From the sequence record PQ066597.1: 64,000 bases of DNA. One strand, given 5' to 3'. The translations under genes were made by a program, and so were the position numbers. Numbering within the stretch: the stretch's first letter is position 1; each line of letters opens with the position of its first letter. Positions 30,003 through 62,091 of the stretch are shown piece after piece. Under the pieces are notes generated by a model. That model did not search any database. It was not told where the DNA came from and saw nothing but the letters and a program-made list of their open reading frames with translations.

Positions 30003-30905
30003 ATGGAAAAAATTAACTATGGTCACTGGGTAACTGACGAGCAGTTTGACCCAAAAACGGTTCTTGGTTTTGTGTATATGATTACTTTCTCCAATGGTAA
30101 AAAATACATTGGAGCGAAACGGGTTTGGAAAAACCTAAAACGCCCGCCATCCACATACAAGAGGCAGGGTAAAACAGAATTTATTGAATCTGATTGGCGC
30201 TCGTATAGGTCCAGTTCAAACGAAGTGGTTGAACTGGAAACCAGAGGTATAGAGATCTCAGAGATGAGGATCCTCGCCACCTATGATTCTTGGGGTAAAG
30301 TACTTCTTTTAGAATGTATGCTCCAATTCTCGCTCAATGCGTTAACCTCCGATATATACCTAAACAAGCAAATTGAAGGCATGTTTACGGGGGCATGTTT
30401 TGATAAAAAGGTATACGATGACGTTGCTCGTCTCGTTGCGATTGAGCAATATGATGAGTCTATCCCACAGGTAATTGTTTACCGTGGTGGAGACCGGAGT
30501 GTTATATGTGACAAACAATCAGCAAAAGAATACATCAAAGCTGGTTGGTCTGTCGCGTCTTTACCAGAAAAATATCATCGTAAAAGTATTCCAATGGTTC
30601 CCTATACAATCAAATGTAAGGAAACTGGAACTGAATATACCATCAGTGATTTCAAAACTCAATACGAAGTTTCAAAAAAACTTGAATGTGTTGCAGGGGA
30701 TCTTAGTCGGCTTCGCTCTGGTGAAATTCTGAACATAGGTTCATACACCATGAAGATTCAACGGGAACCCCAACGTTGGGTAAAAGACGGAGTTTCATAC
30801 TACAGTACAGCAGAGTTGAAATCCGCAAAGGTTGACAAATCCGAGTGTGAACACTTCCCAGCAGAAGACCGGGAAGCTTACCGGATTAGATTGTCTAAGG
30901 CTTAA
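30003..30905 (+). CDS. GIY-YIG family (Seg-like) endonuclease
   Basis: GFVYMITFSNGKKYIGAK...ESDWRSYRSSS...LLLEC...YLNKQI. Confidence 0.8.
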   Translation: MEKINYGHWVTDEQFDPKTVLGFVYMITFSNGKKYIGAKRVWKNLKRPPSTYKRQGKTEFIESDWRSYRSSSNEVVELETRGIEISEMRILATYDSWGKVLLLECMLQFSLNALTSDIYLNKQIEGMFTGACFDKKVYDDVARLVAIEQYDESIPQVIVYRGGDRSVICDKQSAKEYIKAGWSVASLPEKYHRKSIPMVPYTIKCKETGTEYTISDFKTQYEVSKKLECVAGDLSRLRSGEILNIGSYTMKIQREPQRWVKDGVSYYSTAELKSAKVDKSECEHFPAEDREAYRIRLSKA

Positions 30906-31085: not shown

Positions 31086-31205
31086 ACAGATCTCGAACGT
31101 AGTGAGACGGCGTAGCCGCCTGTTCGCTTCGCTCACTCTTTCTAATTATAGATCTTCTATATAAATACTTATAGAGACTTTATACTTTGATTGCACTTGA
31201 AACTA
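31086..31205 (+). repeat. 120-bp structured element, copy A
   Basis: 114/120 identical to the reverse complement of 55681-55800 (manual alignment). Confidence 0.97.
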
Positions 31206-53482: not shown

Positions 53483-54202
53483 ATGAAAAAGCGGTTTGTT
53501 AGTTTTGCTATCTTAGGTGCTATGTGTGCTATTAGTGCGGTACAGGTTAATGCGGCATCTTTTGACTGTGAGAAAGCATCGAGTAAAATAGAACGAACTA
53601 TTTGTGCAGACGAACGGCTGAGTGAATCAGATGAGAAACTGAATTCTGTTTATAAAGAAGTTCGAAAAATTAACCCAGCAATCATAGAAGGTCAGCGAGA
53701 TTGGGTCAAACGTCGTAATAAAGCATCTTCAATCGAAGAACTTGACCAACTCCATGAAACACGGATCCAAGAACTTGAGGCCATGCTTAAACCAATCATC
53801 GAACAAGATGATGAAAGTGTATTCACCCGTGCGGAAAAACCAAAAATCAAGAAAGTGTCTGTTGTTGAAAATAAAAACGTAGTGAAAGACATTAAATATT
53901 ATGTCGATGAAGTACAACGTACTGGTGGAATGACTGGTAAGGACGGATTCTTTTCTGCAAAAGAAGTTGGGAAGGGTTACCCTAGCTGGTTAAAAGGTTG
54001 TGGGATTATGGTAGGAGAAGTACACGGTACAAAATACTTCATCAACGACGCCAAGAAATATGGTCAATTTGATATCTATGTTAATAATGAGCATAGCTTT
54101 AAAATTGTTGCTGCAAACATGATGATCAAATATATGGTGGATTCCGTGAAGGGTGATTTGGGTCTTGTTAAAATCATGTGTGATTCCGGAGAATTATATT
54201 AA
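53483..54202 (+). CDS. secreted LprI/DUF1311-like (lysozyme inhibitor-like) protein
   Basis: Signal peptide ending VNA-A, then SFDCEKASSKIERTICADERLSESDEKLNSVY...QRDWVKRRN. Confidence 0.8.
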   Translation: MKKRFVSFAILGAMCAISAVQVNAASFDCEKASSKIERTICADERLSESDEKLNSVYKEVRKINPAIIEGQRDWVKRRNKASSIEELDQLHETRIQELEAMLKPIIEQDDESVFTRAEKPKIKKVSVVENKNVVKDIKYYVDEVQRTGGMTGKDGFFSAKEVGKGYPSWLKGCGIMVGEVHGTKYFINDAKKYGQFDIYVNNEHSFKIVAANMMIKYMVDSVKGDLGLVKIMCDSGELY

Positions 54203-54480: not shown

Positions 54481-55278
54481 ATGGCATTGAATTATGTAGA
54501 AGAACCAGTAGAAAAAGAAACTAAACCAAAAAAGTCTACTGTGAAAAAACAAAAAGAACTTGACCTTGGGGTAATCAACGAAATTGTTGATGCTAATACC
54601 GCACCAGAAGCGAAAGCGAAAATTCAAGCATATGCTAAGGAATGTGGTTTTAAAATTAGCAAGTCTAATACTTCGGTTGACGATATGATCGTTAAACTCC
54701 TTGAAATGGCGGACGCCAAAGAGAATGAAAAACTGGACCTTGCACCGGAACCGAAAGAAAAAACCCCTTTTGTCGAACCAGTTGTAGTCGATGATGAATT
54801 CGACAATGTAGAAGAGGTTATTGAACTTGGTGTGGTTGAATCAATCAAAATTGATGATGGGGTGGTTAATATCAATACTCCTAACGATGTTAAAATTGAA
54901 TTCACTCCACCGAAACAACCAGAATATATTGATGCTTCTGGGTTTAAAACTCTCGACGAATTAATTGAAGATGAAAAGAAGTTCGTTAAAGAAAAAATGA
55001 ATTTGGAAACTACTAAAGATACCCAAGAACCGGATTTGACTTATGGTTTCAAGCCGAAAGTAAATCTGATTGGTGCTGTTGGTAACCAATACCTAAATTG
55101 CCCGTATTGGATTCTTGATTGGATCCTTGAGAAAGGACCGTCTTGGAAGAGTATTATTGATACTCATGAACGCGAACCGGATAAAGCACTTCTGAAAACA
55201 GTTCTTTATTACATCCAGATTAATGGTAGTGTGACATTGCGCGAGAGTCGTAATTCTCGTTTCCATACCATTTACTAA
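54481..55278 (+). CDS. inh: inhibitor of prohead protease
   Basis: C-terminal PYWILDWI...LYYIQINGSVTLRESRNSRF matches Inh; CTAAATA at 54448-54454. Confidence 0.88.
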   Translation: MALNYVEEPVEKETKPKKSTVKKQKELDLGVINEIVDANTAPEAKAKIQAYAKECGFKISKSNTSVDDMIVKLLEMADAKENEKLDLAPEPKEKTPFVEPVVVDDEFDNVEEVIELGVVESIKIDDGVVNINTPNDVKIEFTPPKQPEYIDASGFKTLDELIEDEKKFVKEKMNLETTKDTQEPDLTYGFKPKVNLIGAVGNQYLNCPYWILDWILEKGPSWKSIIDTHEREPDKALLKTVLYYIQINGSVTLRESRNSRFHTIY

Positions 55279-55283
55279 TATCT

Positions 55284-55308
55284 AGCCATCCTACTGGGTG
55301 GCTTTTTT
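55284..55308 (+). terminator. terminator after inh
   Basis: GCCATCC-TACT-GGGTGGC-TTTTTT. Confidence 0.75.
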
Positions 55309-55363
55309 GTATCCCTAAATACCAATTGACTGACCATTTTGGTCAATATAAGAAGGGTGTTTA

Positions 55364-55585
55364 ATGGAATACAATTTCATCGAAGTTAATGAAAATATTT
55401 TTGTTCTTACTGGATATTTCGGATCTTATAATTTGATTGAGAGATGGAAAAGACTTGAAGAAGATGACCATTTAATGATCGTGAAGATAAAGGAATATTT
55501 GGGGAAGGGGAATATTGTGGTTGTACATGATGTACAAGAAGATTTATTCGTTAAGCTAGATGGAGATAAATTTTACGTTTTTTGA
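55364..55585 (+). CDS. hypothetical protein
   Basis: 73 aa, CTAAATA at 55315-55321, followed by hairpin AGGTGGTC-GAGA-GATCACCT-TTTT. Confidence 0.65.
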   Translation: MEYNFIEVNENIFVLTGYFGSYNLIERWKRLEEDDHLMIVKIKEYLGKGNIVVVHDVQEDLFVKLDGDKFYVF

Positions 55586-55680
55586 TTTCGTATTGTATCA
55601 GACATTACGAATGTTTTTAACTTTTATACTTAGGTGGTCGAGAGATCACCTTTTTTGTATCTTTTATATACAAAATAAAA

Positions 55681-55800
55681 TAGTTTCACTTGTAATCAAA
55701 GTATAAAATCTCTATAAGTATTTATATAGAAGATCTATAATTAGAAAGTGTGAGCGAAGCGAACAGGCGGCTACGCCGTCTCACTACGTTCGAGATCTAT
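55681..55800 (-). repeat. 120-bp structured element, copy B (inverted relative to copy A)
   Basis: Reverse complement matches 31086-31205 at 114/120 positions. Confidence 0.97.
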
Positions 55801-55838
55801 TTATTTATAATGCTATTTAGGTGTGTTAAAATATCATC

Positions 55839-56399
55839 ATGAAAAGGAAAATTGTAACTCTTATAGGAACCAGATATCCTAACGAAGAGTATAAACAGTT
55901 GATGATAAGAATTGGAAAAGCTTTTTCTGATCGTGGTTATGGTGCTAGATCTGGTGGTGCCATTGGTTCTGATACGCTTTTCCTAACCGAATATGACCCA
56001 GCATTAACCATTGTATATCGTCCTGATGATAGACCCGGTTGTGTTAATGTCAAAAATCATGAAAACTATTATGAATTTGAATTGCTTGCTTCCCGTGTTC
56101 ATGGATCTGGTATTGGATGGGAATTTATGCCAATTGGTCACCAAGAATTACACGCTAGGAACGTTCCTCAAGTCATGGGATTAAATCTCAAGTCTTATTC
56201 TGACTTAGTTGTATTTTGTGCGGAAGAATCGATACATGGTACTGTATCTGGTGGAACTGCTACTGCGGTTAAAATAGCAAGAAGCCTAAATATACCTACC
56301 CTAAACATTATGAACCCGGTTCAAAGATCAAAACTTTGTAAGTGGTTAGGTATTGATGATATACCAGTATTAGAAAAGGTTGACATTTTCAATCTCTAA
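55839..56399 (+). CDS. SLOG (DprA/Smf/LOG) superfamily protein
   Basis: LIGTRY, RSGGAIGSD, HARN..QVMG, GGTATAVKIA..LNIPTLNI. Confidence 0.85.
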   Translation: MKRKIVTLIGTRYPNEEYKQLMIRIGKAFSDRGYGARSGGAIGSDTLFLTEYDPALTIVYRPDDRPGCVNVKNHENYYEFELLASRVHGSGIGWEFMPIGHQELHARNVPQVMGLNLKSYSDLVVFCAEESIHGTVSGGTATAVKIARSLNIPTLNIMNPVQRSKLCKWLGIDDIPVLEKVDIFNL

Positions 56400-56437
56400 A
56401 TATTGTTGTGGAATAATAACAATAAACGAGGTTGAAA

Positions 56438-56782
56438 ATGAAAAGCTCACCACGTAAGATCGCCAGAACTGCGCATGATGCGATTCGACGGTTTAATTTA
56501 ATACTAGGCGACACCGATACATTGTGGAAAGAAGAACCAGAAAAAGTTAAACGGGTTTGGACTAAACATGTAACATATATAATCGATCACCCTGATTCTG
56601 ACGCTCGAACTGTTCATGAGCTTTGGAGAAATTATAAAGAGGGAGAAGGTTGGATATTTGGTGAAGATAAATCTAGAGACGAGAAAACCCACCCATGTTT
56701 GACATCTTACGATGAACTACATGAAATAGAAAAGATGAAATATTATATTTTCATCGAAACTGTTCTTGAGCAATCAAAATAA
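56438..56782 (+). CDS. RyR-domain protein
   Basis: HELW..YK..EGWIFG..K....KTHPCL..YDEL...EK; CTAAATA at 56396-56402. Confidence 0.88.
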   Translation: MKSSPRKIARTAHDAIRRFNLILGDTDTLWKEEPEKVKRVWTKHVTYIIDHPDSDARTVHELWRNYKEGEGWIFGEDKSRDEKTHPCLTSYDELHEIEKMKYYIFIETVLEQSK

Positions 56783-56817
56783 AAAAGCCCCGACCTAAAA
56801 AGGTTGGGGCTTTCTTT
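56781..56817. terminator. bidirectional terminator between the RyR gene and gene 24
   Basis: AAAAAAGCCCC.ACC...GGTTGGGGCTTTCTTTT. Confidence 0.7.
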
Positions 56818-56860
56818 TATCCAGAATAAAGCTTCTACGTCTTTTTATCTGGAAAATTAA

Positions 56861-58090
56861 TTATGCGTAATCTTTCATTTCGACCATGCACATACGAGCC
56901 AATTGAGACTTGTTGGCGGCACCTACCCAATCTTCCCCATCATACACCTTAGCCGGGTTGGATTCAATTTTTCTGAAATCTGGGCTAGTAGATAGAGCGT
57001 ATCTTGAGATAATACCAACTACAGGTTGTAGTGCATCCGGATCGGCAGCAACCATAAAAGTCCCCGCTTCATCTTCTTCGATATAAGGACTGTAATAAAC
57101 AGCACTTACTGTATCAACACCTTCATCAAATTTAGCCTTAACACCAACCAACATATAATGAACAGGAGTCTTTGAATCAACAACCAATTTCATTTTAGTA
57201 CCGATAATTCGGTGTTGATCGTCAACTAGTCCAGACGTTTGTATAAGTGCGGCCACATGAGCAGAAGCAAGAATATAAGTCGGTTTGAATGTGGTATCTA
57301 ACGTAATTTGAGCAGCCATACGACACGCACGAGCCACCAAATCACGACCAGCGAAATATTCAGTAGTTGCTACATTATACGGAGTTGCTTTAACTTCTTT
57401 GGTGGCAACAGTTACCAACTTCATGATAATATCGCTGTTAATTTCTTCTGCGATGGCAACAGACAATAGATCTTCTACTGCGGCATCACCATCCATATTC
57501 ATACCACCCATATCTTGAAGAAGTTCTAGGGTGATGTTAGATTTTAGTTTGCGACTACGAACAACGGATTTCCATTTGTTCATTACATATCTGGTTTTTT
57601 GGATTTCTTTATCTTCTTGTGTGTTTGGTACAATTGCGTCAACAACAAGACGAAGGTTGCCGGTAAAGACGTTCTCAAAAAGAGAATTCAAATCACCGGA
57701 GTAATCACCATCATTGATAACTTGGAACACATAACCTTCACTGGTAAAATATGTTTTTGATACCATACCAGCACTACCAGCGGGTAATGCAGCAACGGCA
57801 GCCATATCAAATTCACCACCATAATTACGGTTGTCAAGGTTAATATCCCGATGACTTTGATTGTCTTCGCTAATATACTCGTAACGTACACCAAATACGT
57901 TTGCTACTGGGTCTGTAGTTGGTTGAACACCAGCAAGCTCATCATAAATTTTATTAAATGTTTTGCGAGTTAGTGAAACTAAAGAAGGGCGACCCGTTAC
58001 GATATCACCACTACTAGATTCAACCAACCGCCCGGACATACCAGACTCTTTAATTAGGTCTTGTATTTTTTTGGAGACTACTTTAGCCAT
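56861..58090 (-). CDS. 24: capsid vertex protein gp24
   Basis: GRPSLVSLTR, GVQPT..PVA..FG.RY, RSRKLK..IT.ELLQD, LS..IAEEIN.DI. Confidence 0.93.
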   Translation of the reverse strand: MAKVVSKKIQDLIKESGMSGRLVESSSGDIVTGRPSLVSLTRKTFNKIYDELAGVQPTTDPVANVFGVRYEYISEDNQSHRDINLDNRNYGGEFDMAAVAALPAGSAGMVSKTYFTSEGYVFQVINDGDYSGDLNSLFENVFTGNLRLVVDAIVPNTQEDKEIQKTRYVMNKWKSVVRSRKLKSNITLELLQDMGGMNMDGDAAVEDLLSVAIAEEINSDIIMKLVTVATKEVKATPYNVATTEYFAGRDLVARACRMAAQITLDTTFKPTYILASAHVAALIQTSGLVDDQHRIIGTKMKLVVDSKTPVHYMLVGVKAKFDEGVDTVSAVYYSPYIEEDEAGTFMVAADPDALQPVVGIISRYALSTSPDFRKIESNPAKVYDGEDWVGAANKSQLARMCMVEMKDYA

Positions 58091-58223: not shown

Positions 58224-59906
58224 TTAGGCACCCAGAACACGTACACGACGGTAGAAGGAGTTCTTACCGAAGATTGCAGCACCCGGCATTCCGGAAGTGA
58301 TCTTGGAGAAGCCTTTGTTCTTGGAACCGTCAGCGAACGGGTGCAGTTTAACACCGTAACGGGTCTTGAAGCCAAGAATGGTAGCGAAGGACTTAGGATC
58401 CACACCACGCAGCGGGCTCAACGGGACGTATGGGCAGTAGTACAGACCTGCATCCAGTTCGGAGCTACCCTTGAAGCCTACAGTGAAGTAATCTTCAACA
58501 GCGTACTGGTCGATGAAGACACGATACTTACCAGCCAGAACACCAGCGAACTGAGATACGGAGGTATCAGTGTTCAGCTTGGTAGTACCAGCAGCAGCCG
58601 GAGAAACCAGTTGGTCGGTGGAACCGAGCATTACGGCAACGTTACGGGAACAGATTACGAAGTTACCGTTACCACGACCGGTTTGACGACCGATTTCAGC
58701 AGCTTCCTTATCGATTTGGGTAACCAGAGCCTTGGCGCTCTCACCTTGCCAACGAGCACCACGAATGTCGTTCGGGTCGGCAAAGTTGAAGACACCAGCT
58801 TGACCACCATGTTGGTTAGTCCAACCGGTCTTACCAATTTGAGCGGTAGCGTTGATCCACAGGATCATTTCACGGTTGATTTCCAGCATGATTTCGTTAG
58901 CCAGAATGCTGGACAGTTCGCTGTCTGCATCCAGACCGTGAACGTTACGCAGGTCCTGAGCCAGTTCGATGGAGTACTGAGCTTTCAGTTGACGAGCCTT
59001 AGCTTCAACTACTTGCTTATCAATACGGAAACTCATTTCGGGCCACGGGTTATTGCTGGAACCATTAAAGTTCTCTTGCAGTTCCGCCATGGAGGTAGCC
59101 ATACCTTCACCGATTTCAACCGCGATCTTGTCGTGGATCAGTTTCAGGTAACCAGCGGTTTTAACGTCAGCAGCAGTACCAGCAGTATAAGCGGTAACGA
59201 ACTGAACAACCTTAGTACCGGAGTTGGAATAAGCGTCTACTTCTTCATCCAGTTGGAAGCGAGCCAGATCACCGATTGCATAGGTTCCGTCTTTATCAAA
59301 AGCAGGAATCAGCGGGGCAGTGGCACCACGACCAGAGAAGCTGGAATCAGGTGCATATTGCGGGTGGAAAGCTTCGCGAGCTTGAGCATCCAGCGCATCA
59401 GTACCATAGATGGCACGAAGGGTGAATACCTGACCAGCGGAAGAGGTCATCGGCTGAACACCACAGATATCAAAGGCAATCAGGTTGCTGATAGCACGAC
59501 GAGCCAGACCCATAACAGCCGGACCGACGTTGGTGATGTTACCGGAAGCTTCACCAGAGGCGATCTTAACAGCATCATAACCGTGGTCACCGACGATGTT
59601 AGCTTCGGTTAGCATGGTTTCCATCTCTTCACCGGTCAGTTCGCGACCTTCTGCCAGAGCAGCGGCTTGAGCTTCGTTCAGCATCTTTTTGGCTTCTGCC
59701 AGTTGAGCTTTACGACCTTGAACGTCAACCATGGAGTCGATTACGGTTTGGTCGGTATATGCAGCACCGTCGTTACTCTTGATGTCTTCATATTGGTTTT
59801 CCATCAGACGAGCGACGATATCCTTGCGCTTCATGGTAGCAATTTCCGGCATACCTTCTTTTTCAAGAAGCGGTTTCCACTTAGCGATAATAGCGGTCTT
59901 AGACAT
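58224..59906 (-). CDS. 23: major capsid protein gp23
   Basis: LIAFDICGVQPM, EMSFRIDK..VEAKARQLKAQYSIELAQDL, YCPYVPL, FKTRYG. Confidence 0.99.
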   Translation of the reverse strand: MSKTAIIAKWKPLLEKEGMPEIATMKRKDIVARLMENQYEDIKSNDGAAYTDQTVIDSMVDVQGRKAQLAEAKKMLNEAQAAALAEGRELTGEEMETMLTEANIVGDHGYDAVKIASGEASGNITNVGPAVMGLARRAISNLIAFDICGVQPMTSSAGQVFTLRAIYGTDALDAQAREAFHPQYAPDSSFSGRGATAPLIPAFDKDGTYAIGDLARFQLDEEVDAYSNSGTKVVQFVTAYTAGTAADVKTAGYLKLIHDKIAVEIGEGMATSMAELQENFNGSSNNPWPEMSFRIDKQVVEAKARQLKAQYSIELAQDLRNVHGLDADSELSSILANEIMLEINREMILWINATAQIGKTGWTNQHGGQAGVFNFADPNDIRGARWQGESAKALVTQIDKEAAEIGRQTGRGNGNFVICSRNVAVMLGSTDQLVSPAAAGTTKLNTDTSVSQFAGVLAGKYRVFIDQYAVEDYFTVGFKGSSELDAGLYYCPYVPLSPLRGVDPKSFATILGFKTRYGVKLHPFADGSKNKGFSKITSGMPGAAIFGKNSFYRRVRVLGA

Positions 59907-61614: not shown

Positions 61615-62091
61615 TTAGAGCCCCATCGAATGGCGCTTACGCATAGCCTTTTTATATTTCTTATTAGCTCGAATCTGAATAGACGGGTTAGCTCTTTTGG
61701 TTTTAACCGCATGTCTAGCAATTTGACGACGCTGTGACTTACTTAATCCAGTGGTTTGTGTCGCTCTACGTTTACGGGTTTCACGGTCATGGATACGTGT
61801 AACAGTACCGGCAGCATTTACACGCTTCACAAGAACTTCATCAAGTTCCTCAGACTCTTCCAAAATACTTAGGATCGCCAATGCTTCAATCGCATTTTCA
61901 GAAATCATATTTTCTGCAATTGTCAAAGAGTCATCTTCACCAAATACAGATTTAAGGTGTTGTGCTTTTTCGGGAGCAGTTGATTCAACGCATTCAGCGA
62001 TTAACGAAAGGAGTACGTCGTACTCCAAATCGGTTTCAAGAATGCGAGAACCTTTTACTCCCCATTTGGAAATTACTTCTTGTTTTTCCAT
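61615..62091 (-). CDS. 68: prohead core protein gp68
   Basis: RRATQTTGLSKSQRRQIAR..VKTKRANPS...R..MRKR..MGL. Confidence 0.93.
   Translation of the reverse strand: MEKQEVISKWGVKGSRILETDLEYDVLLSLIAECVESTAPEKAQHLKSVFGEDDSLTIAENMISENAIEALAILSILEESEELDEVLVKRVNAAGTVTRIHDRETRKRRATQTTGLSKSQRRQIARHAVKTKRANPSIQIRANKKYKKAMRKRHSMGL

What the first reader, a model, noticed from the sequence alone, without database searches (positions are those of the whole stretch)
55839..56782. SLOG + RyR-domain gene pair: candidate counter-defence module against nucleotide signals
Seen: two adjacent co-oriented genes inserted between repeat copy B and gene 24, closed by a bidirectional terminator. One is a stand-alone SLOG protein (SGGAIGSD, GGTATAV), the other a stand-alone RyR-domain protein (GWIFG...KTHPCL..YDEL) with a late promoter at 56396. 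Established: SLOG domains bind or hydrolyse nucleotides (the ThsA SLOG domain senses gcADPR in Thoeris; LOG and PpnN are nucleotide hydrolases), and RyR repeats bind adenine nucleotides. From memory and unverified here, phage RyR proteins have recently been linked to degrading ADPR-based immune signals. Inference: the pair may sequester or process TIR-derived or NAD-derived signals in sequence. I know of no description of the pair as a unit.
Basis: partly seen in the sequence, partly recalled or inferred. Interest (0 to 1): 0.7.

Follow-up and report, generated by a model that had tools for sequence, protein, structure and literature searches.

The report
Phage SLOG and RyR counter-defence genes
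Two neighbouring genes of an Aeromonas T4-like phage encode a widespread but untested nucleotide-binding SLOG protein and a member of the recently described RyR-domain family that neutralises bacterial Thoeris alarm molecules, but the two look like separately regulated neighbours, not one two-part machine.

Summary
The window is Aeromonas phage vB_AdhaM_G2. ORF 55839-56399 is a stand-alone SLOG-fold protein and ORF 56438-56782 a stand-alone RyR-domain protein. They lie between a repeat element and a bidirectional terminator next to gene 24.

Two 2026 preprints (RyDEP; RyR Tad) show that phage RyR-domain proteins cleave or sponge 2'/3'cADPR and defeat Thoeris. The window protein keeps the ligand-contacting His, Trp, Lys and His. 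It has Tyr where RyDEP has its catalytic Asp, so I predict a sponge, not a glycosidase.

A strong RNA helix pairs the end of the SLOG ORF with the RyR ribosome-binding site. A late-promoter motif sits between its arms, which implies late-only translation as for T4 genes e, soc and I-TevI.

The SLOG protein belongs to the large viral DprA-like SLOG family (PHROG 768). Members are fused to NADAR or DUF4326 and lie near Nampt or Macro genes. The family was predicted in 2022 to act on ADP-ribose derivatives and has not been tested.

The pair is not supported as a unit. Adjacency occurs only in Aeromonas T4-like phages and diverges in step with gp24. None of 162 other RyR loci has the SLOG nearby. 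The SLOG stands alone at the same locus in other T4-likes.

Interest is moderate.

The parts
55632..55651 (+). Intrinsic-terminator-like hairpin followed by a T-run; it closes the upstream gene 55364-55585.
55681..55798 (+). It contains a GC-rich palindrome at 55750-55784 and a sigma-70-like TTGTAA-N17-TATAAG. Together with the terminator before it, it resembles a PeSL promoter-terminator cassette.
   Evidence: It is 95.8% identical to 31088-31205 on the minus strand. Relatives carry 4-7 matching places per genome. The promoter reading comes from the sequence and was not tested. PeSL concept: PMC4122927.
55839..56399 (+). Gene for a 186-aa stand-alone SLOG-fold protein of the viral DprA-like family (PHROG 768).
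56384..56440 (+). Two-tier RNA hairpin. The outer stem pairs 56384-56396 (last codons of the SLOG ORF) with 56428-56440 (GAGG Shine-Dalgarno plus AUG of the RyR ORF). The inner hairpin pairs 56401-56409 with 56416-56424.
   Evidence: MFE -20.4 kcal/mol, z -7.1, 0 of 200 shuffles as stable. Outer duplex -16.5 kcal/mol, 0 of 500 shuffles as stable. The same layout occurs in relatives with different arm sequences.
56396..56402 (+). Late-promoter-like motif CTAAATA, lying between the 5' arm of the outer stem and the inner hairpin.
56438..56782 (+). Gene for a 114-aa stand-alone RyR (Repeat12-like) domain protein of the RyDEP / RyR Tad family. It carries H60, W63, K78, H85 and K101, and Y102 in place of the family's Asp.
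56784..56813 (.). Bidirectional intrinsic terminator shared with the convergent gene 24 (56861-58090, minus strand).
   Evidence: + strand; T-run on the minus strand read

Best explanation
These are two separate phage genes that deal with host NAD-derived nucleotides. They lie side by side in a variable region next to head gene 24, and they are not an obligate two-step module.

The RyR-domain protein belongs to the RyDEP / RyR Tad family. [quoted passage not shown] That would keep Thoeris-type effectors switched off. It is unlikely to cleave the signal, because Tyr replaces the catalytic acid of the glycosidase dyad.

Its translation is probably confined to late infection. In transcripts that read through from upstream, its ribosome-binding site is locked in a helix with the end of the SLOG ORF. 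Transcripts starting at the late promoter inside that structure lack the 5' arm and can be translated.

The SLOG protein is a member of a very widespread phage family. It most likely binds, and perhaps processes, an ADP-ribose-related nucleotide in the pocket formed by its invariant residues. It is expressed independently from upstream promoters.

Shown here: the gene structures, family membership, residue pattern, predicted RNA structure and distribution. Inferred: ligand identity, sponge behaviour, expression timing and the activity of the SLOG protein.
For: RyR protein:
- Pfam RyR score is above the gathering cut-off.
- PDB sequence hits are RyR Repeat12 domains, the Bacteroides RyR-like protein and 35TM, the RyDEP structure, at E 5.5e-4.
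- BLASTP against DyoEdafos gp78 gives E 2e-8.
- Foldseek top hits are all RyR domains.
- Equivalents of RyDEP H75, W78 and H100 are invariant in 80 distinct sampled domains. The D117 equivalent is Asp in 76 and Tyr in 4, the latter from the window clade and Ishigurovirus. The Tyr is fixed across that clade.
- Both preprints show that the His/Asp dyad is needed for cleavage, and that homologues act as nanomolar gcADPR sponges.

Late-only switch:
- T4 genes e, soc, 49 and I-TevI are the precedent (PMC3014915).

SLOG protein:
- PHROG 768 match at E 1e-51.
- 1573 representative clusters and 1386 phage records.
- Invariant G10, R12, S38-GGAxGxD45, R107, N108, Q111 and G138-G-T140.
- SLOG fold.
- Fusions to NADAR (3), DUF4326 (2) and DUF488-N3a (1) among the top 150 relatives.
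- Neighbours include Nampt, Macro and NAD-dependent ligase.
- Published prediction in PMC9503650.

Independence of the two genes:
-.
Against: - No ligand binding, activity or expression timing was measured for either protein.
- In RyR Tad the Asp is also a binding residue: the K170A/D171A mutant binds about 100-fold more weakly. The Tyr could therefore weaken or redirect binding instead of simply abolishing catalysis.
- The SD-sequestering helix is statistically strong in the window clade. It is weaker in Aeh1 (13 of 500 shuffles as good) and not significant in phiWae14 or PX29 by the duplex test.
- Adjacency has been kept across about five genera with a constant 37-39 nt spacer. That could reflect selection for co-location.
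- My samples of other RyR loci are biased towards the clades nearest the query alignments. Genome-wide co-occurrence away from the immediate flanks was not measured.
Confidence: 0.6

Rival explanations
1. The SLOG and RyR proteins form a functional two-step unit that sequesters and then processes the same TIR- or NAD-derived signal, or acts as a complex.
For: - Adjacency with a 37-39 nt spacer is kept in the window clade, Ishigurovirus, Cinqassovirus, Chrysonvirus and Angelvirus, although RyR identity falls to 32%.
- Both families are linked to ADP-ribose chemistry.
- DyoEdafos RyDEP does hand its product to neighbouring NARP1 enzymes. That phage also carries a SLOG protein of another family (YAcAr) about 5 kb away.
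- The end of the SLOG ORF is physically part of the RyR translation switch.
Against: - None of 162 RyR loci outside Aeromonas T4-likes has the SLOG in its flanks.
- The SLOG gene stands alone at the same locus in PS2 and Phi1 and elsewhere in about 1,350 phage records without RyR.
- Divergence of both genes tracks gp24, so the adjacency is a single inherited event.
- The RyR protein lacks the catalytic Asp.
- The switch uncouples RyR translation from SLOG transcripts.
- In phage 65 the SLOG copy is frameshifted while the RyR gene is intact. That is an old record, so sequencing error is possible.
Confidence: 0.15
2. The SLOG protein has nothing to do with immune signals. It is a DprA-like nucleic-acid-binding factor that serves recombination or RNA repair, and its position beside the RyR gene is incidental.
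For: - The best structural matches are DprA and ShosA (TM about 0.54 and 0.45).
- The GxR and SGGAxGxD motifs align with DprA's first 50 residues.
- Of 86 family members, 63 give weak DNA_processg_A hits.
- The gene directly follows RNA ligase 2 in Klebsiella phage Miro and lies near rnlB in T4-likes.
- Sporadic fusions of viral SLOG domains to nucleic-acid enzymes are reported.
Against: - Scores are far below the DprA family cut-offs: Pfam 18.4 against 29.6, TIGR00732 15 against 191.
- Similarity to DprA ends after about 50 residues.
- There are no extra DprA domains; the protein is a bare 186-aa Rossmann-like domain.
- The family's own invariant R107-N108-x-x-Q111 block has no counterpart in the DprA alignment.
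- The recurrent fusions and neighbours are NADAR, DUF4326, Macro and Nampt.
Confidence: 0.17
3. The Tyr-for-Asp change means that this clade's RyR protein no longer targets 2'/3'cADPR. It has either shifted to another adenine nucleotide or lost its counter-defence function.
For: - The Asp contacts the terminal ribose and contributes to binding in RyR Tad.
- Only 4 of 80 sampled domains carry Tyr.
- Two of eight tested homologues in the RyDEP study did not bind the signals.
- RyR Repeat12 domains also bind ATP and ADP.
Against: - The other binding residues (His, Trp, Lys, His, Lys) are intact.
- The Tyr is fixed, and the gene is under strong purifying selection at dN/dS 0.07. Loss of function is therefore unlikely.
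Confidence: 0.2

Closest known systems
RyDEP (mycobacteriophage DyoEdafos gp78; PDB 35TM; preprint PMC13232231)
   Same: Both are small stand-alone phage RyR Repeat12-like domains. The window protein is 30% identical to gp78 over 64 residues (E 2e-8). It conserves the equivalents of H75, W78 and H100. The family is shown to defeat Thoeris by acting on 2'/3'cADPR.
   Different: The window protein has Tyr at the D117 position, the catalytic acid, so glycosidase activity is not expected. It is not embedded in a NARP1 operon. It sits next to a SLOG gene and a head gene, and it carries a late-only translation switch.
RyR Tad (Pectobacterium phage vB_PatP_CB1 gp68, C-terminal domain; preprint 10.64898/2026.06.04.730250) and the sponge-type RyDEP homologues H4 and H7
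   Same: A non-catalytic sponge is the behaviour I predict here. The window protein is about 33-36% identical to the close CB1 relative, phage CB4. Equivalents of H129, W132, K147, H154 and K170 are conserved.
   Different: RyR Tad has an extra N-terminal domain and lies in the N4-like 'anti-signalling hotspot' beside the primase. It keeps D171, which the window protein replaces with Tyr.
Viral SLOG domains of Iyer, Burroughs, Anantharaman and Aravind 2022 (PMC9503650); PHROG 768 'DprA-like DNA recombination-mediator protein'
   Same: It is the same family. The protein is stand-alone in most phages, and relatives are fused to NADAR and DUF4326. The family is predicted to sense or process ADP-ribose derivatives made by host immunity.
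   Different: That paper does not mention RyR domains. It assigns most viral SLOGs to the YpsA-like clade, whereas here the nearest solved structures are DprA and ShosA. No member has been characterised experimentally, as far as my searches show.
T4 genes e, soc, 49 and I-TevI, and Aeh1 mobE: hairpins that sequester the ribosome-binding site and contain a late promoter (review PMC3014915)
   Same: The SD and AUG are paired with upstream sequence. A late-promoter motif lies inside the structure, so late transcripts lack the 5' arm.
   Different: Here the switch controls a predicted counter-defence gene, and the 5' arm is the coding end of the neighbouring SLOG gene. Transcript ends have not been mapped.
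DprA / ShosA
   Same: They share the SLOG Rossmann-like fold and the first glycine-rich nucleotide-binding loop.
   Different: Scores are below the family thresholds. The protein has no SAM or C-terminal domains and no ShosT partner, and its conserved core motifs differ.

Membership tests
Pfam RyR domain (PF02026) | Profile score above the curated gathering cut-off | tested here: met
   41.8 bits against a cut-off of 27.4. The precomputed Pfam entry for the identical protein is PF02026.
RyDEP / RyR Tad family (phage anti-Thoeris RyR-domain proteins) | Sequence and fold relationship to the founding members | tested here: met
   35TM chain at E 5.5e-4. BLASTP against DyoEdafos gp78 at E 2e-8. 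32-35% identity to the homologues in phages CB4, 8P and LKA5. All top Foldseek hits are RyR Repeat12 structures, although with weak E-values.
RyDEP / RyR Tad family | Ligand-contacting His, Trp and His (RyDEP H75, W78, H100), and Lys (RyR Tad K147, K170) | tested here: met
   The window protein has H60, W63, H85, K78 and K101.
RyDEP glycosidase subtype | Catalytic dyad His75 + Asp117 | tested here: not met
   The position aligned with D117 is Tyr102, in a gap-free stretch of the alignment. The Tyr is fixed in the clade.
RyDEP / RyR Tad family | Binding of 2'cADPR or 3'cADPR and relief from Thoeris | not testable with these tools
   This needs biochemical and biological measurement.
SLOG superfamily | Rossmann-like fold shared with DprA, LOG, YpsA, Moco carrier protein and the ThsA sensor domain, with a glycine-rich loop | tested here: met
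   AF2 model with pLDDT 96. Foldseek finds DprA, ShosA, Moco carrier protein, LOG, YpsA and the ThsA SLOG domain, all at probability about 1.0 and TM 0.39-0.54. SGGAIGSD loop.
Viral SLOG family PHROG 768 | Full-length profile match | tested here: met
   E 9.9e-52, covering residues 1-173 of the protein and positions 1-182 of the 191-position profile. BFVD matches reach TM 0.82.
DprA (PF02481 / TIGR00732) | Score above the curated cut-offs and similarity over the whole Rossmann domain | tested here: not met
   18.4 bits against 29.6 and 15 bits against 191. The profile alignment to DprA chains covers only positions 5-53.
LOG (cytokinin riboside 5'-monophosphate phosphoribohydrolase) family | Profile match to the LOG family | tested here: not met
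   No Pfam LOG hit at E up to 1. Structural similarity is only distant, TM about 0.47. A LOG chain scores E 0.37 in the profile search.
ShosTA (ShosA antitoxin) | ShosA profile match and an adjacent PRTase toxin ShosT | tested here: not met
   The PADLOC ShosA hit is 19 bits over residues 3-47 only. There is no PRTase gene in the neighbourhood.
T4-type late-only translation switch (genes e, soc, 49, I-TevI) | SD/AUG paired with upstream sequence, and a late promoter placed so that late transcripts lack the 5' arm | tested here: met
   A 13-bp outer stem covers GAGG to AUG, with CTAAATA between the arms. The predicted late transcript leaves the SD unpaired.
T4-type late-only translation switch | Mapped late 5' ends and reduced early translation | not testable with these tools
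   This needs expression data.
Conserved SLOG+RyR gene pair (the proposed unit) | Adjacency recurring in unrelated phage lineages | tested here: not met
   None of the 80 IMG/VR loci, the 77 metagenome loci or the 5 reference phage loci has the SLOG in its flanks. The pair was found only in Aeromonas T4-like phages.

The most novel reading that the evidence does not exclude
The Tyr-for-Asp variant of the RyR sponge, translated only late, and the separately expressed SLOG protein may divide the work in time or by ligand. The SLOG protein would deal with ADP-ribose-derived molecules from the start of infection. The late RyR variant would capture a signal, possibly different from 2'/3'cADPR, that host TIR sensors make once structural proteins appear. 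It might also be packaged into heads for the next infection. This would make the locus a small, timed anti-signalling island, and it would give the first functional handle on the very large viral SLOG family.
Probability: 0.15. Interest if true: 0.65.

Novelty: new member of a known kind. Interest (0 to 1): 0.4.

Why it matters
The RyR half adds a T4-like Aeromonas phage clade to a counter-defence family described only in 2026. It brings two features not reported there. One is a fixed Tyr at the catalytic and ribose-contacting Asp position. The other is a T4-style late-only translation switch. Both bear on when and how phages silence TIR signalling.

The SLOG half belongs to one of the most widespread uncharacterised phage protein families: about 1,400 phage records and 1,573 clusters at 50% identity. 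Its position beside a validated type of anti-Thoeris gene, together with its NADAR, DUF4326, Macro and Nampt associations, strengthens the 2022 prediction that it acts on ADP-ribose derivatives. That remains an association, not a demonstration.

Showing that the pair is not a conserved module saves effort that might otherwise go into treating it as a two-component system.

Tried and rejected
- **Protein searches with limited reach.** The word-based protein search found only 7 relatives for the SLOG protein and 5 for the RyR protein, all close. Single-protein search for related loci found only two near-identical loci.
- **Alignments too diverse for pattern scans.** I therefore have no large independent sample of SLOG loci. 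I inspected 9 annotated phage loci and 2 metagenome contigs instead.
- **Consensus RNA structure.** RNAalifold on the MAFFT alignment of the intergenic region gave no structure, because the two clades are out of register. I folded each sequence alone and tested arm-to-arm duplexes against shuffles instead.
- **T4 consensus late promoter.** TATAAATA is not enriched and not on the right strand here. The operative motif in this phage is CTAAATA.
- **Rejected family assignments.** ShosA-like antitoxin mimic: the match is weak, N-terminal only, and there is no ShosT. LOG-type hydrolase: no profile match. NARP3 link: unrelated.
- **Other dead ends.** The sigma-70 scan gave nothing above chance. A literature search for host Thoeris in Aeromonas gave nothing usable.
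Full report
**Identity of the window.** The region 55300-57000 is 100% identical to Aeromonas phage vB_AdhaM_G2 (PQ066597.1), a 229.6-kb T4-like myovirus. It is 96-99% identical to CC2, AS-sw, AS-zj and about a dozen other Aeromonas phages. Window base 1 corresponds to record base 62001. The finding lies in the variable region between inh (54481-55278) and the convergent head genes 24 (56861-58090, minus) and 23 (58224-59906, minus).

**Observation.**
- Upstream lie a terminator-like hairpin (55632-55651) and a 118-bp repeat (55681-55798). The repeat has a 95.8% identical inverted copy at 31088-31205.
- Downstream lies a 13-bp GC-rich hairpin (56784-56813) with T-runs on both strands.
- CTAAATA at 56396-56402 matches the motif found 14-75 nt upstream of gp23, gp24, gp22, gp20, inh and a tail-fibre gene. 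It occurs 23 times in the window against 12.9 expected, and no shuffle reached 23. The T4 consensus TATAAATA is not enriched here.
- Against phage ZPAH1 (76% nucleotide identity), dN/dS is 0.05 for the SLOG gene and 0.07 for the RyR gene, compared with 0.10 for gp24. Synonymous sites are near saturation, so the ratios are rough. Both are clearly constrained genes.

**The RyR protein.**
- It passes the Pfam RyR threshold.
- Its PDB sequence matches are RyR Repeat12 domains, the Bacteroides RyR-like protein and chain 35TM_A.
- 35TM is the structure of RyDEP, gp78 of mycobacteriophage DyoEdafos. The preprint PMC13232231 shows that RyDEP is an inverting glycosidase. It opens 2'cADPR and 3'cADPR to linear ADPR using a His75/Asp117 dyad, with Trp78 and His100 holding the ligand. 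It relieves Thoeris, and six of eight tested homologues bind the signals without cleaving them.
- A second preprint (10.64898/2026.06.04.730250) describes 'RyR Tad', the C-terminal domain of Pectobacterium phage CB1 gp68. It is a dimeric sponge for 1''-3' gcADPR (Kd 43 nM), 1''-2' gcADPR and cADPR. Its binding residues are H129/W132, K147/H154 and K170/D171.

I fetched DyoEdafos (accession given in the paper) and aligned gp78 with the window protein, and with homologues from seven other phages.
- The window protein has H60, W63, K78, H85 and K101 at the binding positions. It has Tyr102 where RyDEP has Asp117 and RyR Tad has Asp171.
- Among 80 distinct RyR domains from the loci I collected, the His, Trp and His are invariant. 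The Asp position is Asp in 76 and Tyr in 4, all from the window clade and Ishigurovirus.
- The Tyr is fixed in relatives down to 72% identity.
- Mutation of the dyad abolishes cleavage in RyDEP, so I predict no glycosidase activity.
- The Asp also contributes to binding in RyR Tad, so affinity or ligand preference may differ as well.

**A translation switch.** The 61 nt from the end of the SLOG ORF to the RyR start fold into a two-tier hairpin (-20.4 kcal/mol; z -7.1; 0 of 200 shuffles as stable).
- The outer 13-bp stem pairs 56384-56396, the last SLOG codons, with 56428-56440, the GAGG Shine-Dalgarno sequence through the AUG.
- The late-promoter motif lies between the outer 5' arm and the inner hairpin. 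A transcript starting a few bases downstream of the motif lacks the 5' arm, and its ribosome-binding site is predicted to be free.
- ZPAH1, phage 65, Aeh1 and phiWae14/phiAS5 show the same layout with different arm sequences. For example, anti-SD CUC pairs with SD GAGG in the window clade, and UCCUUC pairs with GAAGGA in Aeh1.
- The arm-to-arm duplex beats all 500 shuffles in the window, all but 7-13 in ZPAH1, 65 and Aeh1, and is not significant in phiWae14 and PX29.
- This is the arrangement documented for T4 genes e, soc, 49 and I-TevI and for Aeh1 mobE (PMC3014915).
- The inference is that the RyR protein is made only from late transcripts. That fits the report that Thoeris sensitivity depends on tail-fibre proteins. 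The timing itself is not shown.

**The SLOG protein.**
- It matches PHROG 768 over its full length. It reaches only sub-threshold scores against DprA models and ShosA.
- An exhaustive HMMER search found 1573 representative clusters, mostly 170-200 aa stand-alone proteins. tblastn found the family in 1386 phage records.
- The invariant positions are G10, R12, S38-GGAxGxD45, R107, N108, Q111 and G138-G-T140.
- The AlphaFold model is confident (pLDDT 96). It matches only SLOG-superfamily structures: DprA, ShosA, Moco carrier protein, LOG, YpsA and the ThsA sensor domain, with TM 0.39-0.54. In the viral library it matches many phage 'DprA-like' proteins, with TM up to 0.82.
- Profile similarity to DprA stops after the first 50 residues.
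- Among the ten longer relatives in the top 150, three carry NADAR, two carry DUF4326 and one carries DUF488-N3a plus DUF7831.
- In other phages the gene lies near Nampt and a Macro-domain gene (PAK_P4), directly after RNA ligase 2 and near Nampt (Klebsiella Miro), or between two NAD-dependent ligase ORFs (Vibrio Athena).
- This matches the 'viral SLOG' of Iyer et al. 2022 (PMC9503650). They predicted that it senses or degrades ADP-ribose derivatives and noted that it is uncharacterised. That paper has no mention of RyR, the RyDEP preprint has none of SLOG, and no paper in the library holds both terms with 'phage'.

**Is the pair a unit?**
- The pair sits beside gene 24 in the window clade, ZPAH1 and 65 (Ishigurovirus), Aeh1 (Cinqassovirus), phiWae14, phiAS5 (Chrysonvirus) and PX29 (Angelvirus).
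- Between the window phage and Aeh1, identity is 41% for SLOG, 33% for RyR, 44% for gp24 and 31% for Inh. Both genes have therefore diverged with the backbone, and the adjacency counts as one ancestral event.
- Outside this lineage I found no pair. None of the 80 IMG/VR RyR loci or the five annotated reference phages (8P, LKA5, Vibrio 230E39-1, CB4, Marshall) has the SLOG within 5-8 kb. None of 77 metagenome RyR loci has it either; 33 of those are 8 kb or longer.
- Conversely, the SLOG gene is the last gene before gene 24 in Serratia phage PS2 and E. coli phage Phi1, with no RyR gene. The most economical history is that a RyR gene was inserted between an older SLOG gene and gene 24 in an ancestor of these Aeromonas phages.
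- In phage 65 the SLOG copy is frameshifted while the RyR gene is intact. tblastn covers it in two pieces in two frames, and a strict alignment shows four indel events, none a multiple of three. The record dates from 2010, so sequencing error is possible.
- DyoEdafos also has a SLOG protein, but of the YAcAr family and about 5 kb from RyDEP.

**Verdict.**
- The RyR gene is a new member of a family described in 2026, with a variant pocket and a T4-style late switch.
- The SLOG gene is a member of a very large, still uncharacterised phage family.
- The limits are as follows. The RyR locus samples are biased towards clades near the query alignments. Genome-wide co-occurrence away from the immediate flanks was not measured. 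I could not obtain a large SLOG-anchored sample. Nothing about ligands or timing was measured.

Noticed in passing
window 55681-55798 and 31088-31205 (minus): A 118-bp repeat, 95.8% identical between the two copies. Each copy follows a terminator hairpin and precedes a small gene. It contains a GC-rich palindrome flanked by AGATCT and a sigma-70-like TTGTAA-N17-TATAAG. Relatives carry 4-7 matching places per genome. It resembles the PeSL promoter-terminator cassettes that mediate gene shuffling in T4-like phages (PMC4122927).
   Followed up: partly
window 53483-54202 (+): A 239-aa protein with a signal-peptide-like N-terminus and a Pfam LprI (lysozyme inhibitor) domain (E 8e-7, above the cut-off). 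This is unusual for a lytic T4-like phage. The family is PHROG 4675, of unknown function.
   Followed up: no
L009:5986-6846, L010:5995-6867, L100:4452-5324, L011:5671-6327: In Pseudomonas phages 8P and LKA5 the RyR domain is the N-terminal third of a protein of about 290 aa, encoded between capsid and tail genes. In Kuttervirus Marshall it is the C-terminus of a 290-aa protein. In Vibrio phage 230E39-1 it is fused to a Phage_gp49_66 domain. A position inside the structural gene block suggests late expression or packaging of RyR-domain proteins in other lineages too.
   Followed up: partly
L182:1692-4485 (Vibrio phage Athena): The SLOG gene and one small ORF lie between two ORFs that are both annotated as NAD-dependent DNA ligase. 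The ligase gene therefore looks split around them.
   Followed up: no
L003:15387-15803 (DyoEdafos gp89): The phage in which RyDEP was discovered also encodes a YAcAr (cpYpsA-related) SLOG protein, two genes upstream of an RNA ligase and about 5 kb from RyDEP. The RyDEP preprint does not mention it.
   Followed up: partly
L006 (Aeromonas phage 65, GU459069.1), SLOG gene upstream of 65p078: The SLOG homologue is frameshifted (two tblastn pieces in two frames; four indel events in a strict alignment) and annotated only as small fragments. The RyR gene's annotated start also looks too far downstream. These may be true decay or errors in an old sequence.
   Followed up: partly
window 30003-30905 (+): A homing endonuclease gene lies between the ribonucleotide reductase genes and the tail-fibre genes, next to the other copy of the repeat element.
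   Followed up: no
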